Positions 7,135 through 62,197 of a stretch of DNA of 64,000 nt are shown one piece after another. This DNA comes from Lytechinus pictus (taxonomy: Eukaryota): NCBI RefSeq assembly GCF_037042905.1, contig NC_087258.1, positions 13,144,001 to 13,208,000 of the forward strand. Reading direction: 5' to 3'. The notes under the pieces are model-generated. The model did not search any database. It was not told the origin of the DNA and worked only from the letters and a program-made list of their open reading frames with translations. The translations under genes were made by a program, and so were the position numbers. Each line of letters opens with the position of its first letter. Position 1 is the stretch's first letter.

Positions 7135-12195
<5,061 letters not shown>

Positions 12196-14880: not shown

Positions 14881-15084
14881 TGTTTATTTTATCACCATGT
14901 AAACGAAGATATTTGGCTTATGACATAACCAGGATTTAATGTTTAACCAGATGAAGGAGCAGCCAGCCCAACACAATTCCCGCCCAAATATTGGTTGCTA
15001 ACGGTCACTTGTCTCATTCATGTTCGAGCATTGCTGGTCTCAAGTTTTGCCGTTTTGCCTTTGTAGACGAGTAAAACCATCATC
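14881..15084 (+). promoter_or_regulatory. Proximal promoter and 5' UTR of gene 2
   Basis: Blocks conserved with gene 3: ATCACCATGTAAAC (14891) and GTTGCTAACGGTCACTTGTCTCATTC (14994). Confidence 0.55.
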
Positions 15085-22967: not shown

Positions 22968-26046
<3,079 letters not shown>

Positions 26047-31405: not shown

Positions 31406-36388
<4,983 letters not shown>

Positions 36389-37678: not shown

Positions 37679-38255
37679 TTAAAGGGGATACTCTAGGCTG
37701 GAAGTAATGATCAGATATTAAAGTAAAATTAATGATCAGATATTTAAATAAAATTAGACTAACAACACACTGAAAATTTAATCAAAATTGGACAAGGAAT
37801 AACAAAGTTATGACATTTTAAATCTATGTATTATTTTGGGAAAACGGTTCTCTGCATGTCGTCATTAATCACTGGCGTAAATCCCGGGGGGATGGGGGAA
37901 TATATCTCCCCCACTTTTCGAGGAGGGGGAATGGCCTGTACAAACATCCCCCCCCCCAGTTTTTACGAAATAAATGAAAAAAAAATCACAAGAGATAATT
38001 GTTTTATTGGTGAAAATTCTTCCTAATATACCGCTTAACAAATAAAACAATATTATTGAATCATAAAATGCAAATAAGGAGCCAGTTCACCATTTCCAAA
38101 CGAAATACTTATTTAACATTGAAGAGAAACCCCCGTTGGGAAGGGATTAAGATGGAATGTCAAAACATTTTGAATGTGATCTCTAATAAAACCATTAAAC
38201 CATCATGGGGTAAAAAATATAATAATATTGGAGGGGTATTTGCCATATGGACATA

Positions 38256-39483: not shown

Positions 39484-41086
39484 TGGACATATAAATGACA
39501 ATTCCTTGCATATCTAAAAACATGATTGCAAAAAAATGCCAAAATATTTCAGTCATCCCCCACCCATCAACACGGATTTACGCCAGTGTCATTAATATAC
39601 AATGAGCATATCCCCACTTATTCTTTTGTATTCTATAATGTGAAATGATGTTTATTCAAATTTTACCCACCAAAAATATTGGATTGACGACTGATTTAAA
39701 TTCATAACATTCATTACTGCAACTTGTCTTGTTACAAAAGGATTAAAATATCAAATAATTGTGATTTCATGTAATGAAAGGAAAATGGGGATATGACATC
39801 GACCCGTCTAATGTTCATGACGGCGTGACGGTGCATATATTTATTTCACAAACTAAAGCTGAAATCTTAGTCAATAAGTTTTTAATTTTTATCAATTTTG
39901 ATTAAATTTTCGGCGTTTTGGTGAGTGAATTTTACTCTTTTTATCTAGGAATGATTTTTTTCCCAGCATGCAGTACCCCTTCAAATATGGACTCCCAATG
40001 GCGTATCACGTCGGAGTAAAATTTGTCCTCTTACATCGGAAAACAAACCGTCATTGGCGTCGAATAATTGTATCTTAGTCGCAAAACTGCTTATTTTTTA
40101 TATCTAAAAGCACAAGTATCTTAACAGTCGAACCGGCAGTCGAATAGAATGTCCTTTGTATTTAGCCACTACTGCACAGAGACTAACAAAATCCTCATTC
40201 CCTTCCCAATAATCACAAATGTTTAAAATCCAATTTTATCATGGCGCATTCACAATGGAGTTCACTTCTCGCATATGTCTGAAATTGTCGATTCCAAAAC
40301 ATGATTGTGCTACTGCTAGACATTCGTTACTGAGGCACTCCCCGGCCTCTTCTAACACAATATGCCTACAATATGTACTCCAGTTACGCATTCGGTTCCT
40401 TGAAGGAATAAATTTACATTTATTGGTTTTTAAAGGTTTCTCCATGGCTACACGGTGCAGATAGTCCATTGAAGAGACGATATTTTCTTCTCCCCGGGCC
40501 TGGGTCAGACACAAACAAAGGAAACAAAAACCACCAACCCTTGAATCCAACCTGCCAACGTGTAGTCCAATACGTGGAGATTTCCTTTTTAATATGGACT
40601 CTAATGATTGAGTGGGTGGTTTTGTTACAAAGGAAATCCTCAATTCTAGGAAAAAATGAATAGCAGAGGATAATCAGAAATCACTGGGTGCGAAACAACG
40701 TGTTCAGGAAGAAAACAATTCCATATTTTTTCCTCGTACATAACCGATTTGTCCTTCGCCTAACGAGTTTTCTACTTATGATACAGGAAGGTATAGAAGA
40801 CGATTTAGCCATATGTATATTCATATACGCAGCATAGCTATTTTCGATAGAATGAAATGCCCGATTAAAGAGCACTGCTCTGAAATACACAAGGAAAATA
40901 AATATACACAAGAAAGGCAATTTAGAATGTTTTACAACCCAAAAGTATTTATAGGTGATAATAAAAACTAAAGAATGACCATTCCAAAATTGACGCCCCA
41001 TAAGAAATTCCATATTTTCTTTCAGAATGAACAGTCCTAAGCCACTGTGCTTCAATATATTTGACGGTGAAGATTAGTTATCCTTA

Positions 41087-50386: not shown

Positions 50387-52619
50387 GCGCATGTATATTA
50401 TAAAAGCATAGGAATGTAAAACTCAATATTTAATATCTATATAGTTTTTTTGTGTAAAACATTTTATTTAAATGAAAGTATTTAAGTATGCCCATCATGA
50501 CTTTTTGGAGATCTTCTCTTTCTTCCATCAATAACGCTTTGTTTCAACGTGCCCGGAACGTAAACACGTAAACTGGTGATTGTCCTCGTTCAGTAATATT
50601 GTTCTTTTCCAATTCTCTCTTTCTCGAATTTTCTTCGCGATAATTCAATAATTTCATTATTTTATGATTCAATATTCATTATAATGTATAATGGGTGATT
50701 TCTCTTACAGTACTTGAGTGTGTAATGATTTTTTGAACAGATTATTCACTATTGATACATATATTAATATTTATTTTCAAACTGCCAGATCACGTCGATA
50801 TATTGCTACTTATATAGTTATATCCATCGATGTTTAATTGCATGAGGTAATAAATTGTGATGTATATTGTTAACAATGTTTGCCCTGAGGTGGGAATAAT
50901 GTTTTCTTCATATTGTATCGATAAAGTAAATGTGCAATACGTCTTTTTTTTTTATTAAATCAAAGTAAGACACATGGAGTTCATTCAATAGAACTATAAT
51001 AATTATCATTAAAAGTTTATATAATGTCATTGATACCCACTCAAAGAAAAAACCAAAATAAAACAAAACAAACAAAACCATCGGAAAACCTAACTTGCGA
51101 AAATATTACAAAAGTAATGTTTAAGATGAAGCTTTGTATGACATAAGATTCGACTAATTACTATGAATATTAGCTCGATGGAAAAGGGTCTCTTTCGGCT
51201 CGAGAAAATAATTATCTTCAATCATTATGACCGTTACATCGTAAATGTCGATATTCTGCATTTCCAGTCCGTGCGGCTTCTGTCAAGTAAACATTGTGTA
51301 ACTTGTGAAAATAAATGGCGATGCTTAAAACAAATAAGGTATTTATAAATGTTTATTCTTATTGGCTTTGTTGAATACGCTCAAATGAAATGGGATGCGG
51401 TAATGCAGATTATGGTACACTTTAAGAACTTTTTTAACCGACCCAAAAGTTGGTTAATAATGAAGAAACGACCAAACTGTTGGTTGAAAAAAATGCAATC
51501 CATTTTGAACGCATTTTTTTTTTTTTTTATATATATATATATATTTTTTTGGGGGGGGTTCAACCAGGAGTTTGTAGGTTATTTAAATCAACTGGATTGG
51601 TTAGAAGTCTATGTTTGTACCTTAGCTTTATCCTAAATTATTAAAAGTGAAGAAGTGGGTCACAAGTTCTGATCTATCTCTTTCTCTTTTTTTTCTTTAT
51701 CATACTTTGTTTATATTGTAAAAGCCTAAATTTTTGCCCTTTTCTGTAGCATCATTGTTTAATTTCTTGATTTAAATGTTTTGTTGTTTAAATTTTTGTT
51801 TGGGAGTTTAATTAATTTATTGTTTTCATTTTCTCTTGGGGGTGTTAGTGCTTGGGGTATAACAGTCAACACTGGATATTCGTCTTCTTCCTTTTGCTCA
51901 ATATTTCCATTTGCGTCATACATTTTATCACTTTTGATTCTTTTTTCCAAAATTATATGCCTATCTATAAATAAAAATTCTAATGTCTAGAGTGGAAAAG
52001 TGAGGGGCATATTTTCACTTTATGGGCGTGCCTGTATATGTGCGTGTGTGTCCCCCACATCTCCCTCTTACTGAAACTACTATTTTCTCTCTTTCTCATG
52101 CAGTTAATTCCCTTTTTCTTGCTATCGCTTTGTGAAACGTTGTGTAGGTGTGTGTGCACACCCCTCTACCATCACTCAAACCCTCCTCCTTACTTCATAT
52201 CCCTCTGTTTGATTCTTGTTCTTGTTATCACTCTCGGTGATGATGTGCGTGTGTCTGTGTGTGTAAGAGAGAATGAATGTGGGTGTGTGATTACGTGGGC
52301 AGATGAGGAAGGGTGTGTAAGAGGGTATGTGCGAGTTTGTACTGGTGTTCTTCTTCCTGTATGATCTTTGGTCATCCGCCACTACAAAAAAAAACAATAA
52401 CAAAGAAAACCATGAATTAAAAGTAGAGTCTGGATCATGAAAGGACTGTTTACAGAAATTCATAAAAAGCATACGTATCTCACCAGGGGCGCTAAGCGCG
52501 AACTGCAGATCTTTGATATTTAAACCTCAGAAGCGCGGGACAATCTAACTGATCATGAACAAGATATCTCACACATAATAAAAACATGATCCAAAAGGCG
52601 GGTAGTCGGATGGTCCGAA

Positions 52620-53750
52620 TGTTCACCTATGGTCAGGTTTTATTATGGTCCGACCAAGTTTATGCAAAGTAACTGGGATGTCGAATCAGATATTGCTTAG
52701 AGTTTATCGTTGACGTGAAAATGACCAATGACCAACGTGGTAAACTGTTCTCTTAATCGGCCGTGATGGATGGAATGGGATAGCATCACTGTAACGATGG
52801 CGACTGTGGATCGTGAAATAAGCAATTGCAAAAGAAACCTTGAAGTTCATTACCAACTCGGTCATTGGGAATGCATCGTCGTATACATGGCAACTGCGAT
52901 GCAGAAAGAGGGAATTCATCGGAGAGCTCTTTCTTTAGTAATTTGTAGTAATTTATATTTTATTCGTTGGTCCAGCAGAAAAAAACCTGTTTGATGGAAG
53001 TAATACCATTCATATTCGAAATATGTACCCTTTCAACGCAAATAGAATCGGAATGATATAAAAACATAAATAACATCATCGTCATCTAAGGCAATAGGCT
53101 ACATTAATTGAAATTCCATTTTAATTGCGAGTGTAAATTCTCACGCCGCCCCAAACGTAAATCATTATTTATTTAGATATAAATATTTCAACCCGGAGCA
53201 TCCTTTAACGAGTTGAATTGCATATGATACATTTGAATGTAACTAAACTACGTGCGTCGTGGTCTAGTGGTTAAGATTCTCGTCTTTCAATCTGAAGGAT
53301 GTGGGTTCGATTCCAAGACATGGCGTGTTTTCCTTCAGAAAGAAATTTATCCAACACCAGAATCGGTAGACTAGCTTAGCCGGGGTAATATAGGAGCACC
53401 TTGAGCACCTATCAAGGTGGATACGTGCGCTATACAAATCCTATATTATTATTATTATTATCTTTATTCTAGCGCGGGTGATTATCCCTTTAATCGCACA
53501 AAATAGACTATATCAATCACAATACCAATAGAGAGAGAGAGAGATAGATTGTCATTGTCTTATGGGAGTTTACTCTCTATTTGTATCTATAGAAACGCGA
53601 GTTCCATAAATTATTTCAATATCAAGTATGTCCTTGCTTCTGCTTATGTCATTTCGGAATCAACCAGTCATTAATAAAGCAATGAGCTCTCGTTCTATCA
53701 ATTTGCGAATAGACGATTGCTTATTCATTTGTATTCTACAGTACGCATAC
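52620..53750 (-). promoter_or_regulatory. Orphan diverged paralog of the gene 6 upstream region
   Basis: Colinear similarity blocks to 60435-61480; no tubulin exon follows. Confidence 0.6.
53252..53460 (+). mobile_element. tRNA-derived SINE
   Basis: A box TGGTCTAGTGG, B box GGTTCGATTCC, unrelated body, (ATT)n tail. Confidence 0.85.
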
Positions 53751-54039
53751 TCTAAGTGGTATACTGTTACATAAAATTATGGACAATTTGATAAATGTCG
53801 GATGTTTAATCCGCATTTGCTGGTTTTGATAATCATTTTTTACTCTTTTTCTTGCCTCAAGTATCATTTCGTTGATTATAAGTGGCATCGTATAATCCTA
53901 ATATCTAAATATGTGCCCATTCATGAAACTACCGAAAACATTTATTTTACATCCTCGCTCACTACGCTCAATCGCATTGACATAAAAAAAATAGTTACAT
54001 TCAAATGTATCCTATGCACTTCAACTCGTTAAACAACGA

Positions 54040-54666
54040 TCCGGGTTTAATAAATATTAATATCTAAATTAATAGAATAAAATTCATCGAGCAAAATGCT
54101 AAAAAAAAAAATCAAAATCTGATAACATCAAAATCAAAATCTGATAACAAATAGCGAAGTTATTTAAAATTTTAAAGTTTAGCAATGTATTGTGAAAACA
54201 GTTATATGCTCGTCGTCATGAATATTCATTACGTGGACTGATGATGTCACATCTCCACTTTCCTTTTTCTTGTGTTATTACATGAAATCATAATTGTTTC
54301 ATTTTTCATACATTACTTGTGTGAATGATATGTCTCACTTGTAATGAAATAAGTTGCACCAATGAATATCTTTTAATGCACTTAATTAGTTGTTATTCCA
54401 ATATTTTTGGTTCTTGAAGGAAAAAACAAACAAACCTAATTTCATATAATAAAATACAAAAGAACAAATGGAGATTCGACACCATCAGTTTGCTCATTGA
54501 ATATTCATAAAGACATGCCTAGAACTGTTTCACCGGAATAACGCAAATCTTTAAAATGCCATAATTGTTATTCCGAGTCCGATTTTGATCAATTTTTTCA
54601 GTGTTTTGTTTATCCTGTTTTTCTTAATCTGTTCAAATCATATTATTTTCAACATGGAGTAATCCT
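54040..54666. mobile_element. TTAA-target foldback MITE, left end eroded
   Basis: Inverted arms with family motifs; ends GGAGTAATCCT|TTAA. Confidence 0.6.
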
Positions 54667-54929
54667 TTAAAGAGGCAAAATTGGACTTGGTGCCTTCCAG
54701 TAATATTTTTCATATTATTGCACGAAGGTAATAAATATTAAAACCATTTTATTTTATTCTCTCGCTTCTCTGATCCGCACATTGATATAATATGGGCCAT
54801 CATACCTACAGGTGAATTGCCTATACACGCGATTCTATACGTGTTCACAACAAAACATAGTAAACAAATATAATTAATTACACATTTTAGGCACCGCCCC
54901 TACACATTTTTATTTTATCATTATCATTA

Positions 54930-54963
<34 letters not shown>

Positions 54964-55062
54964 GGGGGAGGGTAGGCCTATACCTCTAAAAATTAAAACA
55001 AAAATAAAACACCCACATTTACCACCCACCCTCTCATCCTTAGTCACTATTACCTTTACATA

Positions 55063-55513
55063 TACCGTGTTTACACTTAATCGGCATTTGAATCGGCTCG
55101 CGGTTCTGAACCGCGAGCCGATGCAGCATCGGCTTTTTCATAGCGTGTAAACGCGAGTAACTTGAATCGGCTCGCGGTTCAGAACCGGCAATTTGCACCA
55201 CCAAAGTAGTAGGTTCTGAACCGCGAGCCGATGCAGAATCGGCTTTTTTACAACGTGTAAACAAAAAGCCGATTCTGCACCGGCAATTTGTGCGCATTTC
55301 AATTACTTTACCATTGTGACGTAATTGTTAGCGCACTGATCCAGCGTTGTCTTTATTATGACGTATATTGTAGGTATGCGTATCATTTCAAGTTTTTGCA
55401 TCGGCTCGCGGTTCTGAACCGCGAGCTGTAACAACGTGTAAACGCAATCCAAATGCCGATTCTGCATCGGCATTTGGTTCAGAACCAAATGCCGATTAAG
55501 TGTAAACACGGTA
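55063..55513. mobile_element. Hairpin-rich MITE, copy 1
   Basis: TIR TACCGTGTTTACACTTAATCGGCA; internal palindromes ATCGGCTCGCGGTTCTGAACCGCGAGCCGAT. Confidence 0.9.
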
Positions 55514-55578
55514 ATCGTGTACCTTCCTCGCTCTTTCACGCGCACGGACACCCACTCCCCAAAACACACATGCGCGCT

Positions 55579-56030
55579 TACCGTGTTTACCGCTTAATCG
55601 GCATTTGAATAGGCTCGCGGTTCTGAACCGCGAGCCGATTCAGCATCGGCTTTTTCATAGCGTGTAAACGCGAGCAACTTGAATCGGCTCGCGGTTCAGA
55701 ACCGGCAATTTGCACCACCAAAGTAGTAGGTTCTGAACCGCGAGCCGATGCAGAATCGGCTTTTTTACTACGTGTAAACAGAAAGCCGATTCTGCACCGG
55801 CAATTTGTGCGCATTTCAATTACTTTACCATTGTGACGTAATTGTAAGCGCACTGATCCAGCGTTGTCTTTATTGTGACGTATATTGTAGGTATGCGTAT
55901 CATTTAAGGTTTTTGCATCGGCTCGCGGTTCTGAACCGCGAGCTGTAACAACGTGTAAACGCAATCCAAATGCCGATTCTGCATCGGCATTTGGTTCAGA
56001 ACCAATTGCCGATTAAGTGTAAACACGGTA
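55579..56030. mobile_element. Hairpin-rich MITE, copy 2, same orientation
   Basis: About 10-13 differences from copy 1 over 450 bp. Confidence 0.9.
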
Positions 56031-58266
56031 ATAGACGCACGCATACACACCAACTCACACATCCTCCTTCACCATAACCTAACACCGTCTATCTTCCTCG
56101 CTCTTTCACGCACACAGACACCCACATCCCAAACACCAATACACACCCACCCTACATCCACATACGCACACACGTTTACACCCACACCCCCGCACACGCA
56201 CATGACATAATAGATAAACACAAGCGCTTTCAAGACTGGAATAAAAAGACTTGAAAGAAGTTTTGTTGGCTTTTGACATTGTCTTTTCGTAACCTTATTA
56301 ATTCTGGCATTCACAAAAAATATACATGCATGTAGGGTCTAAATGTAATTTTATATTATCATTATTGGCAAGGCTATTATACGGTACAAAGGTAAAATAG
56401 TCAAAATTTATGCAAAATAGGACCGTGCCCATGGAAACTCATTTTGGGTGTGTTTCGTTACGAACAAAAATATTGAAAGATGAAGTAAACATACCCTCAA
56501 TTTCCCTAATTCCCCAAACAACACGTAAAAATATGCGATTTATAATGCAAGTCTCAAATCCAATATTTTTTTTCATTTTGGAGGGGGTACGTTTTGTTGT
56601 GATGTTTTTCTAATTAGGTTCATTCTTTATGGCTAATTTTGTTTTTAACTTTTAAGGTCCTTTTTGTTCTGAGGTTACAATCTTCAATTTTGGAACAAGC
56701 ATTTCTACATCTACAAGATATTTTGGGAGCCAAATTTTTTTTTGGCAATTTTGGTTATGTATACTTTTTACTTCTCAGAGACTTTCCCGGAAAATTGCAA
56801 GAAGCTGTTTAAAGAAGCATCTTTAAATCTCCAAATCATTATCGGAGCAAATAAAAAGTGTTGATTATGTGTACTGCTCACTTCTCAGAAACTTCCCATA
56901 AGATTGTAAAGAGCTTTTTACAGGAGCATTTCTGATGATTGCAGTTGGTTCTATGGTAGCATATAGACCTAAATTTGATGAGAGAAAATAATGGTGAAAA
57001 ACAATAAGTTATATTATTCACGAAATCAAATAGTACATGATTAAATAGATGACCCATGTATAGCACATACACCAACGAAACCGACCCCAGATCGACGTTA
57101 TAAAGATATTAAGTTATTACCTGTGAGTCAAAACATTGGGGGCATGACATGAAGTATTGGGCAAAATTTATATTAACAAAAAGTTGCGAGCGAGCAAGAT
57201 TTTTGTCCTTCTTAATACCAAAATCTAATTTTGTGGTAGATTTTGACATAATATTCAGAAATCATATCATAATATGTTTCCTTTTCTCCTTCCTTCTCTT
57301 TACTTTTCTCATTTTGTTCTTGGTTATGAAAATTCAGGGATCCACGGCCCCAAGTCCCCCCCCCCCCACTTGTTACTACCTACGTCATACAATCGGTCGG
57401 TTTGGAGTTTGTTTTGCTGGTATGAGGTGAGCCGTCTCTTAATTAGCAAGATATGCGCGTCAATAGTTTATTTTTGTTCATGTCAGCTTAGAAATTACTA
57501 AAATTATATCACTTACGTTCTTTTAAATAGTCCTACCAGTGACGTATATTCCAAAATTGAAATTGAAAATCAAAGCAGCTTGAGACGCTGACTTGTACCA
57601 TTAAAACTATTTTGCGTGTATGCTCAAACTTTTCAGTTCTATGGAAAACATGAACGTTAGTTTCACTTTTAGCAATACAGCATTGTTTAATTTTTTCTTT
57701 TCTATAATTACCAAACATAAGGAACATGAATATTCATTGTTAATATGTATTCGTATGTTCATTTTTAAACCTGTTTTTCTTATGTATTGGTTGAATTATA
57801 TCGAAGAATGGCACTGGACCCCCAAAGTTCCACGAATAAGAAAAGAGATTATTATGAAAGCCTAAAGGGAAAAGGACGAAATGTGATATTTATATTATGT
57901 CAAAATCTATTACAAAATAAGATTTTCTCTCGCTCGCGATTGCACCATACATCTTGCAGTGCCCCCTCGATATTTTTGGCTCATTACCCCCACTCACCCT
58001 GTATTTGTTTTGAATTCATCTCTTGATTTTTTTTTTCTACGTGAATGCAGAACTCTCCTCGAGTGTTCATGAATACACTTAATATTTGTCGACCATGTCG
58101 ACAGAATATGAATAACTGAAATAAATGAGTAAATAAAACCAATATATATATATATACCGTGTGGAGACAAAGAGGACATTTGAACCAACAGAAAGTTGGA
58201 CGAATAATCAGATTGGCCTAAACTAAATGATGTGTTAATTTTTATACGAAATCCAACGGAATAACG

Positions 58267-60293
<2,027 letters not shown>

Positions 60294-60362
60294 GTTGATT
60301 GTCTTGAGGCAAATATAACCTGACAAGAAGATAAAGGACTAGATGATCTGCAAATCAAACAC

Positions 60363-60776
60363 CTTCTATATAGAAGTTGGATGATTGTTTGTATTTTAAG
60401 ATGGATACACCAACTGACAGTTTTATGGTCTTTTCCGTTACGACTATATGACCAAAGAGTACTGATCGGAGCAAGTATGTAAATTCACTGGGATCAACTC
60501 AGATATTGCTTTAAGGGTATTAGCATTATTACGTACACCCATCTGATATCTGATGTGTAATTTGAGGCGATCCCAAAGGGTGTTGGCATGGAATAGACCA
60601 ATTGCAATAGAGATGTTGATGTTCTTTGTCAATGTTACTCTCCATTGGTTGTCAAGATGGCTGTACTAGAATCTCTTCGCTGTAACGATGGTGACTTCTA
60701 CGTTTAACGAACGAGTTAATGAATCGTGAACCTTGTTAGTTCATGGGGAAATTGTTTACACCGTTGCTATAGAAAT
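60363..60776 (-). promoter_or_regulatory. Gene 6 upstream region with TATA-like, X-box-like and forkhead motifs
   Basis: Palindromic CTTCTATATAGAAG 60363, CAACTGACAGTT 60412, GTAACGATGGTGAC 60682, TGTTTAC 60753, GTTGCTATAGAAAT 60763. Confidence 0.5.
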
Positions 60777-61592
60777 TGATTGATCGTATATTCAGTCGTC
60801 CACTAGCAAAACCTTGAATTTGATGGGAATAATATAAATTCACACTCCAAAATATCTACACTATTGAAAACATTTAGAATAAAAACATAGGAAACATAGA
60901 TTTAAAAATGATAGCAATAACAAAAAATGCTACCACACCACTACCGTGTACCGCAAATGCAATGATATTTTAGTGTTTTATTTTCTGTTGGAAATGAAAT
61001 AAGCAATAATTACTTAGATAGTCAAAAGGTAACTCCTGCACAACTCTCGTCTGCTGTTTATTCTTTTTCATCTGTGTTTTAATCGTCTTCATCTTAAGCT
61101 TCTAAAATTTCATCTGATGGAATAAAATTAATTAATGGCAAAAGTTAAACATCCATGGGCAAGCAAAGAGAGAGAGAGAGAGATAGGATTAATTGAAATT
61201 TGTAATAATAATAATACTAATACAACTACTAATAATAATGATAATGTATGAATATGCATGTATGAACAAAATCATCCACACTGAGGAGGTTGCTATTGTC
61301 TAACTGTGAGTCTACTCTCTGTACCCAAGGAAACGGGAGTTCGATAGATTATTTATATATCAAATATGTCCTTGATGTCGTTTAGGAATCAACCATTCAT
61401 ACAAACCCACTGCGAGTTCATTATCAATATCAATACAATTAGATGGCTACAAATTCTGCATTTGGACAATGTACTTTCCGCCTTTTTTTTGTACTTGCTA
61501 ATAGCAAAGCTTTTTACACCGCACTGCAAAAAAACGCCGGTGTTAATTTAACACCAACCTGGTATCTAGATCGAGAGAACAACATCATTTAA

Positions 61593-62197
61593 AGGACAAG
61601 TCCACCCCGACAAAAAGTTGATTTGAATAAAAAGAGAAAAATCCAACAATCATAACACTGAAAATTTCATCAAAATAGGATGTAAAATAAGAAAGTTATG
61701 ACATTTTAAAGTTTCGCTTATAGTTTCACACAATAGTTATATGCACATCCTGGCCAGTATGCAAATGAGGGGACTGATGACATCACGCACTCACTATTTC
61801 TTTTGTATTTTATTATCTGAAATACGAAATATTCTGATTTTCTCACTCATGTCATTTGAAATCGAGCTTTATTCTTCCCTGAACTTGTGGAATTAACATT
61901 GTTTAACATTATGTAGTTCAGTCAAGTTTTACATTATTGTCAATTCTGTATAAATTGAAATATTGTATAATTCAAACAATAAAAAACAAATGAAATAGTG
62001 AGTGATGGACATCATAGACTCTCGCATTTGCATATCACTGAGTTGTGCATATAACTGTTTTGAGAAAAATATGCGAAACTTTAAAATGTCATAACTTTCT
62101 TATTTTACATCCGATTTTGATGAATTTTTCAGCGTTATGCTCGTTAGATTTGTCTCTATTTATTCAAATCAACATTTGTCTGGAGTGGACTTGACCT
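61593..62197. mobile_element. TTAA-target (Kolobok-like) MITE, apparently nested in a CACTG-ended element starting at 61522
   Basis: Same family as 32514 and 34022; AACACC/GGTGTT repeats flank it on both sides. Confidence 0.88.

What the first reader, a model, noticed from the sequence alone, without database searches (positions are those of the whole stretch)
52620..53750. Orphan copy of the gene 6 promoter/enhancer with no tubulin gene, aimed antisense at gene 5
Seen: about 1.1 kb between convergent genes 5 and 6 aligns colinearly and in the same orientation with the gene 6 upstream region (60435-61480). Anchors are TCAGATATTGCTT (52686/60499), CTGTAACGATGG(C/T)GACT (52789/60680), AACCTTG..AGTTCAT (52836/60729), a block at 52961-53050/60789-60880, a (GA)n run (53529/61168) and a block at 53555-53670/61295-61400. 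Similarity stops about 145 bp short of the ATG-equivalent. Where exon 1 should be (about 52480) there is a hAT-family fragment, and I see no tubulin relic in 50.4-52.6 kb. The copy is old (roughly 70% by eye, and it has gained a SINE), yet the 17-mer holding an X-box-like site has one mismatch and a second X-box-like site (GTATACATGGCAAC, 52881) is present. Inference: this is the remnant of a deleted seventh paralog whose regulatory DNA was kept. It could act as a shadow enhancer for the cluster, or as a minus-strand promoter firing into the 3' end of gene 5 about 2 kb away. Because the exons are homogenised, such an antisense RNA could pair with all paralogs.
Basis: partly seen in the sequence, partly recalled or inferred. 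Interest (0 to 1): 0.78.

Follow-up and report, generated by a model that had tools for sequence, protein, structure and literature searches.

The report
Decayed duplicate of tubulin upstream DNA
About 1 kb between two beta-tubulin genes is a real, old, two-copy duplicate of the DNA upstream of gene 6, but it lacks the core promoter and shows no transcripts, so it looks like an ordinary leftover of gene-cluster rearrangement.

Summary
Window 52646-53702 aligns colinearly, in the same orientation, with 60463-61428, which is -170 to about -1135 from the gene 6 ATG. There are five or six blocks at 68-81% identity. The best is 53546-53671 / 61287-61400 (74%, E 7e-17). Global score is 370 against 172 +/- 23 for real intergenic controls. 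It is not a dispersed repeat: whole-genome DNA and profile searches find only these two copies. No tubulin relic lies in 50.4-58.2 kb.

- The copy has no counterpart of gene 6's proximal 170 bp, which holds the TATA-like box, so it is not a promoter copy.
- Four RNA data sets give zero reads on the unique parts of 52.0-53.2 and 53.6-54.0 kb. One of them covers the gene 5 3'UTR to about 51.5 kb.
- The exons are not homogenised (dS 0.47-1.4).
- X-box-like matches occur at chance frequency in the window. Their retention in both copies fits neutral decay.

A seventh beta-tubulin gene lies on the + strand just right of the window, so gene 6 is a single inverted member. The truncation may therefore mark a rearrangement breakpoint as readily as a deleted gene. 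The scan holds no earlier follow-up of this stretch. Verdict: ordinary duplication relic, low interest.

The parts
52646..52698 (-). Homology block 1, the end nearest the missing gene. It pairs with 60463-60511 (about 81% identity, contains TCAGATATTGCTT). Homology to gene 6 upstream ends here, about 170 bp short of the ATG-equivalent.
52746..52850 (-). Homology blocks 2-3. They pair with 60633-60744 and include the 17-mer CTGTAACGATGGYGACT (16/17) and AACCTTG..AGTTCAT.
52881..52894 (.). X-box-like 14-mer GTATACATGGCAAC (1 mismatch to GTHNYYATRRNAAC). The roughly colinear partner is 60763-60776.
52946..53075 (-). Homology block 4, AT-rich. It pairs with 60770-60922 at about 68% identity.
53252..53470 (+). 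tRNA-derived SINE inserted after the duplication and absent from the gene 6 copy. This copy lacks about 70 bp that most family members have.
53490..53547 (-). Homology block 5 with a shared (GA)n microsatellite. It pairs with 61132-61186.
53546..53702 (-). Homology block 6 ('block B'), the best conserved. 53546-53671 pairs with 61287-61400 at 74% identity. It holds an X-box-like site at 53583-53596, aligned with 61321-61334. This is the distal end of the homology.
60463..61428 (-). The partner copy: gene 6 5' flank from -170 to about -1135 relative to the ATG at 60293.
60294..60462 (-). Gene 6 proximal promoter and 5'UTR (TATATAG at 60363-60369, about -70). It has no counterpart next to the orphan copy or anywhere in 50.4-52.7 kb or 62-70.4 kb.
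50387..51507 (+). Transcribed 3'UTR of gene 5 (contigs of run X1, depth 37-66). Coverage falls to about 1 by 51.9 kb and to 0 from 52.0 kb.
52441..52560 (.). Fragment of a low-copy repeat with tandem subunits, lying where exon 1 would be expected. hAT identity is not shown.

Best explanation
Window 52646-53702 is a decaying paralogous copy of the gene 6 beta-tubulin 5' flank (-170 to about -1135). It is left over from a local duplication in the beta-tubulin array. The partner gene and core promoter are gone, and a SINE was inserted later.

Shown:
- The two stretches are homologous, colinear and in the same orientation.
- Only these two copies are found in the genome.
- The copy has no core-promoter counterpart and no tubulin coding relic.
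- No transcripts were detected over it.

Inferred:
- The duplication is about as old as the youngest gene pair in the cluster, or somewhat younger. JC distance is 0.22-0.42 in the alignable blocks, against dS 0.47 for genes 4 and 6.
- The copy is evolving neutrally and has no promoter activity.

How the partner was lost is unresolved. It could be deletion of an eighth gene, or truncation at the left breakpoint of the rearrangement that turned gene 6 round between the + strand genes 5 and 7.
For: - Homology statistics.
- Exact anchors.
- Only two copies: whole-genome DNA searches of both halves and of the gene 6 flank return only themselves, apart from the SINE and a microsatellite. A profile of block B finds the two copies at E 1.8e-35 and 1.5e-31, with the next hit at E 0.46. 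No third copy lies near any gene of the cluster.
- No coding relic.
- No counterpart of gene 6's -1 to -170 anywhere nearby.
- RNA: zero depth on the unique sequence at 52000-53199 and 53600-53999 in three raw rRNA-depleted runs and one contig run. The contig run does cover the gene 5 3'UTR.
- Runs of identity in block B (longest 11) are what a uniform 74% identity would give (my calculation).
- X-box retention is compatible with neutrality.
- Array context: six genes in the window, and a seventh on the + strand to the right.
Against: - About half of the stretch is unalignable while short cores are 85-95% identical, which could also reflect constraint on small elements.
- Two X-box-like sites sit at colinear positions in both copies.
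- RNA sampling is thin. Gene 5 itself is silent in the three raw-read runs, gene 6 expression in them could not be checked, and only about 6% of each run was read.
- There are no chromatin data.
- No related species was available to date the event or to show the ancestral arrangement.
Confidence: 0.7

Rival explanations
1. Inversion by-product. The orphan is the distal upstream region of the gene that once followed gene 6 in a head-to-tail array (candidate: gene 7, now on the + strand right of the window). An inversion of the gene 6 segment, with one breakpoint at about -170, separated it from that gene. On this reading no gene was deleted.
For: - Gene 6 is the only minus-strand member, lying between the + strand genes 5 and 7.
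- The orphan lies exactly at the left edge of the minus-oriented block.
- It sits at the spacing expected for the next promoter: 5.8 kb from the gene 6 stop codon, against 2.9-9 kb intergenic distances elsewhere.
- The homology is cut off sharply.
Against: - Gene 7's proximal 400 bp, and the whole of 62-70.4 kb, show no similarity to gene 6's proximal 170 bp.
- Gene 7 is not gene 6's closest paralog: dS is 0.83 against 0.47 for gene 4.
- Neither point is decisive, because half of the flank is unalignable anyway and gene conversion could blur dS.
Confidence: 0.2
2. Retained cis-regulatory module. After losing its gene, the copy was kept as a redundant ('shadow') enhancer for neighbouring beta-tubulin genes, possibly through RFX-type X-box sites.
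For: - X-box-like sites with at most 1 mismatch occur at colinear positions in both copies: 52881/60763 and 53583/61321.
- Short cores with 16/17 and 17/18 identity are flanked by unalignable DNA.
Against: - X-box-like matches are at chance frequency across the window (16 against 15.07).
- The neutral probability of keeping both sites in both copies is 9-15%.
- Published work stresses that a degenerate X-box upstream of a gene does not predict RFX control (PMC2375033).
- A SINE has been inserted into the middle of the copy.
- The other five upstream regions in the window show no such module.
Confidence: 0.1
3. Active minus-strand promoter producing an antisense RNA across the gene 5 3' end.
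For: Only the orientation of the copy and its position 1.1-2.3 kb from the gene 5 3' end support this.
Against: - The copy has no homologue of the gene 6 core promoter.
- Depth is zero on both strands across 52000-53199 in all runs. Coverage over 50400-51507 in X1 is continuous with gene 5 and drops to about 1 and then 0 before the orphan.
- Paralog exons differ by 9-17% at the nucleotide level.
Confidence: 0.03
4. Two copies of an old dispersed repeat that happen to lie near tubulin genes.
For: Both copies are followed within 0.2-0.5 kb by members of the same palindromic MITE-like family: 54133-54672 and 61588-62171.
Against: - No further copy was found by DNA search or by profile search of the whole genome.
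- That MITE family is common in the window, with at least six other copies, so its presence beside both copies can be coincidence.
- Search sensitivity is limited: the DNA search missed the 74% partner, and only 150 of about 29,000 profile candidates were scored.
Confidence: 0.04

Closest known systems
Relic flanking DNA left by duplication and loss in tandem gene arrays (gene-less duplicate fragments, partial duplicates)
   Same: It is a paralogous non-coding segment at the spacing of the next array unit. It is truncated, has been invaded by a SINE, and is diverging at about the neutral rate.
   Different: Usually some coding relic (a pseudogene) survives. Here only the -170 to -1135 flank is recognisable and no exon trace is left.
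Echinoid beta-tubulin gene family (seven genes in Paracentrotus lividus, three exons, introns after codons 19 and 131; PMC6539552)
   Same: The genes here have the same three-exon structure with splits after codons 19 and 131. Seven genes lie in or beside the window.
   Different: That paper's text as searched does not describe the cluster arrangement, the inverted member or an orphan flank. The species of this window is not known to me.
Shadow (redundant) enhancers
   Same: It is a second copy of upstream regulatory DNA within the same locus.
   Different: No evidence of activity, TF occupancy or constraint was obtained. Shadow enhancers are defined functionally.
RFX/X-box control of ciliary genes (PMC2375033; C. 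elegans consensus GTHNYYATRRNAAC recalled from memory)
   Same: One good half-site with an imperfect second half occurs twice in each copy, at matching positions.
   Different: Most of the four sites do not meet the published degenerate consensus RYYNYY N1-3 RRNRAC on either strand. The exception is 60763-60776 on the minus strand, checked by eye. Frequency in the window equals chance.

Membership tests
Paralogous duplicate of the gene 6 5' flank | Colinear, same-orientation similarity well above shuffled and real-sequence controls | tested here: met
Paralogous duplicate of the gene 6 5' flank | Low copy number (not a dispersed repeat) | tested here: met
   within the sensitivity limits stated
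Promoter copy | Counterpart of the core promoter (TATA-like box, TSS region, 5'UTR) of gene 6 | tested here: not met
   No similarity to 60294-60462 in 50387-52700
Promoter copy | Transcripts starting at the element | tested here: not met
   Zero depth at 52000-53199 on both strands in X9-X11 and in X1. Sampling is limited.
Pseudogene / deleted paralog | Recognisable coding relic next to the flank | tested here: not met
   tblastn at E <= 10 and DNA Smith-Waterman alignment find nothing in 50.4-58.2 kb
Shadow enhancer | Open chromatin, TF occupancy and reporter activity overlapping the primary enhancer | not testable with these tools
   No chromatin or reporter data
RFX X-box site | Match to the X-box consensus more often than chance, or kept beyond neutral expectation | tested here: not met
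   16 matches against 15.07 expected. Neutral retention probability 9-15%.
Dispersed repeat / transposable element | Many genomic copies with defined ends | tested here: not met
   Only the inserted SINE and neighbouring MITE-like elements are repeated. The homologous blocks are not.
   There is only a 45-bp match to two loci that carry a tandem-subunit repeat. No transposase was found.

The most novel reading that the evidence does not exclude
The orphan flank is a cis-regulatory module kept after its gene was lost or separated. It would work as a redundant, RFX-responsive enhancer lying between the convergent genes 5 and 6. That would be a shadow enhancer born directly from paralog loss in a ciliary tubulin array.
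Probability: 0.08. Interest if true: 0.5.

Novelty: new member of a known kind. Interest (0 to 1): 0.2.

Why it matters
It matters mainly as annotation. The copy marks an old duplication or rearrangement boundary in a seven-gene beta-tubulin array, and it shows that gene 6 is an inverted member. If the copy were shown to be active, it would be a clean natural example of enhancer retention after gene loss. Nothing found here points that way.

Tried and rejected
- Orthologous loci through proteins: the search for homologous proteins with gene 6 exon 3 returned only highly conserved tubulins from unrelated animals and no echinoderm locus. Synteny in relatives could therefore not be examined, and I ran no further search on it.
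- Inversion test: gene 7's upstream and the whole of 62-70.4 kb were compared with gene 6's proximal 170 bp, with no similarity. The inversion model is neither confirmed nor excluded.
- Rfam and tRNA scans of 50.3-62.5 kb found nothing in the orphan. The only hits were weak miRNA-like ones inside a MITE at 55.1-55.7 kb.
- A profile for block 4 was aligned but not searched genome-wide. It is AT-rich and of low information.
- LTR-like reading (direct repeats flanking gene 6): rejected, because gene 6 keeps both introns and belongs to the array.
- Enrichment of consensus-preserving substitutions in the X-box-like pairs: rejected as circular. The pairs were chosen because both match the consensus, so I used a forward simulation instead.
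There is therefore no positive control for gene 6 promoter activity in those samples.

Full report
**Setting.** The window is G000:C14:13144001-13208000 of an 812-Mb animal genome. It holds six beta-tubulin genes.
- Genes 1-5 are on the + strand, with ATGs at 7135, 15085, 23185, 31406 and 45446.
- Gene 6 is on the - strand, with its ATG at 60293 and exons at 60293-60237, 59780-59442 and 59238-58267.
- The three-exon structure, split after codons 19 and 131, is the one described for sea-urchin beta-tubulin genes (PMC6539552).
- Fetching the flanks showed a seventh gene on the + strand just right of the window. Exon 1 is at L001:6454 and exons 2-3 are at L002:6869-8228.
- Gene 6 is therefore a single inverted member between + strand neighbours.

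- Local alignments beat dinucleotide shuffles clearly: 52646-52698 / 60463-60511 (z 10), 52946-53075 / 60770-60922 (z 7) and 53546-53671 / 61287-61400 (74% identity, z 32; BLASTN E 7e-17).
- Two further colinear HSPs are 52746-52805 / 60633-60696 and 53490-53547 / 61132-61186. None appear on the opposite strand at the same threshold.
- With the SINE removed, the global score against the gene 6 flank is 370.5. The equivalent upstream range of the other six genes scores 152-216, and 60 real intergenic windows score 172 +/- 23 with a maximum of 228.
- Roughly half of the length is alignable, at 68-81% identity. The rest has been replaced by indels.
- Homology starts at about -170 from the gene 6 ATG (weakly about -130) and ends at about -1135.

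**Is it a repeat?** No, apart from its insert.
- The first whole-genome search was swamped by the tRNA-derived SINE at 53252-53470, with 4098 first-look candidates.
- Searching the two halves separately, and the gene 6 flank, returned only the queries themselves plus a microsatellite.
- That search missed even the 74% partner. I therefore built a sequence-only profile of block B and ran it on the whole genome. The two copies score E 1.8e-35 and 1.5e-31, and the next hit is at E 0.46.
- With filters off on 94 kb around the cluster there is no third copy near any other tubulin gene.
- This test has a limit: only 150 of about 29,000 first-look candidates were scored.

**What is missing from the copy.**
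- tblastn with the assembled gene 6 protein at E <= 10 finds no coding relic in 50.4-58.2 kb or in 60.3-64 kb.
- DNA-level Smith-Waterman alignment of gene 6's proximal 170 bp, exon 1, introns and exons against 50387-52700 is at background.
- Gene 6's proximal region carries a TATATAG at about -70. Nothing corresponding to it lies beside the orphan.
- The sequence where exon 1 would be (52441-52560) is a fragment of a low-copy repeat built of tandem subunits, seen at two other loci. I could not show that it is a hAT element.

**Transcription.** One look-up found three raw, rRNA-depleted, paired RNA-seq runs of the same species label (X9-X11) and a contig run (X1). I laid them on 50400-56399.
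- All raw reads fall on repeats: the SINE, the MITE-like element at 54.2-54.6 kb and the MITE pair at 55.0-56.1 kb. Most fit only partly, so they come from other copies.
- Depth is zero on both strands over 50400-53199 and 53600-53999, apart from traces of at most 0.5 at 51.6-52.0 kb and in the 53.0-53.2 kb bin beside the SINE.
- X1 covers 50400-51507 at depth 37-66, continuous with gene 5, so this is the gene 5 3'UTR of at least 1.1 kb. It falls to about 1 at 51.7-51.9 kb and to 0 from 52.0 kb.
- The uneven coverage shows that X1 is RNA.
- There is thus no sign of a minus-strand transcript arising near 52.5 kb.

**The antisense argument.**
- The exons are not homogenised. Pairwise CDS identity is 83-91%.
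- Nei-Gojobori dS runs from 0.47 (genes 4 and 6) to about 1.4.

**X-box-like motifs.**
- The consensus GTHNYYATRRNAAC (from memory) with at most 1 mismatch gives 16 matches in the window, against 15.07 +/- 4.8 in shuffles. There is no enrichment overall.
- Four distinct sites do fall in the two homologous segments at colinear positions: 52881 with 60763, and 53583 with 61321. The second pair is aligned within block B.
- A forward simulation from perfect ancestral sites gives a 9-15% chance that both sites survive in both copies at 26-30% divergence. Shared ancestry is therefore enough to explain them.
- Published work warns that degenerate X-boxes upstream of a gene do not predict RFX control (PMC2375033).
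- In block B the longest identity run (11) is about what a uniform 74% identity would give.

**Origin.**
- JC distances in the alignable blocks are 0.22-0.42. This is similar to, or somewhat below, the dS of the closest gene pair (0.47), so the duplication belongs to the later history of the array.
- The copy sits 5.8 kb beyond the gene 6 stop codon, a normal intergenic spacing for the array. It is therefore where the next promoter of a minus-oriented tandem pair would lie.
- Two histories fit. In one, a partner gene (an eighth gene) was deleted together with its core promoter. In the other, the rearrangement that inverted gene 6 cut a neighbour's upstream region at about -170.
- The second history predicts that gene 7 keeps the matching proximal 170 bp. 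No similarity was found, and gene 7 is not gene 6's closest paralog. Neither test is decisive, given how much of the flank is unalignable.

**Verdict.** The feature is real and its origin is interesting only locally. It is a decayed, gene-less duplicate of upstream DNA in a rearranged tubulin array. The functional readings (antisense promoter, shadow enhancer) have no support from sequence, motif statistics or the available RNA data. The enhancer reading remains untested for lack of chromatin data.

An earlier first-reader note on another piece of this genome (s1-327755) reports X-box-like motifs in tubulin promoters. In this window such motifs are at chance frequency.

Noticed in passing
L001:6454-6513 and L002:6869-8228 (G000:C14:13214454-13226228): A seventh beta-tubulin gene lies on the + strand right of the window, with an intron 1 of about 10.4 kb. 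Gene 6 is therefore the only inverted member of a seven-gene array.
   Followed up: partly
window 14881-15084 and 22981-23184: Genes 2 and 3 share about 200 bp of proximal promoter (core 61 bp at 87%), although their dS is 0.92. No other pair of proximal promoters is alignable, so this may be a constrained regulatory block or a conversion tract.
   Followed up: no
window 55063-56032: Two tandem copies (97% identical) of a young 451-bp MITE-like element with inverted ends of about 125 bp. At least 40 scored genomic copies are 98-99% identical, out of 1142 first-look candidates. RNA-seq reads map here, and there are weak miRNA-like Rfam hits.
   Followed up: partly
window 53166-53245 and 53992-54074: An 83-bp inverted repeat (85.5%) brackets the SINE and block B. 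Its right arm overlaps the start of a dispersed repeat (54040-54127). A few RNA reads join 53166 to 54133 on opposite strands. Its origin is unexplained.
   Followed up: partly
window 54133-54672, 61588-62171, 32868-33102, 34077-34250, 37761-37869, 39610-39800; L001:589-1136: A palindromic MITE-like family is scattered through the cluster. One copy lies 0.2-0.5 kb distal to each of the two homologous flanks, which is probably coincidence.
   Followed up: no
window, all seven coding sequences: dS among the paralogs is 0.47-1.4 with dN 0.006-0.047. This indicates strong purifying selection on the protein and no recent gene conversion. Genes 4 and 6 are the closest pair, although their upstream regions are unalignable.
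   Followed up: yes
window 53252-53470: This SINE copy lacks about 70 bp between its two halves compared with most family members. The 3' half is up to 99% identical to other copies, and the 5' half about 85%.
   Followed up: no
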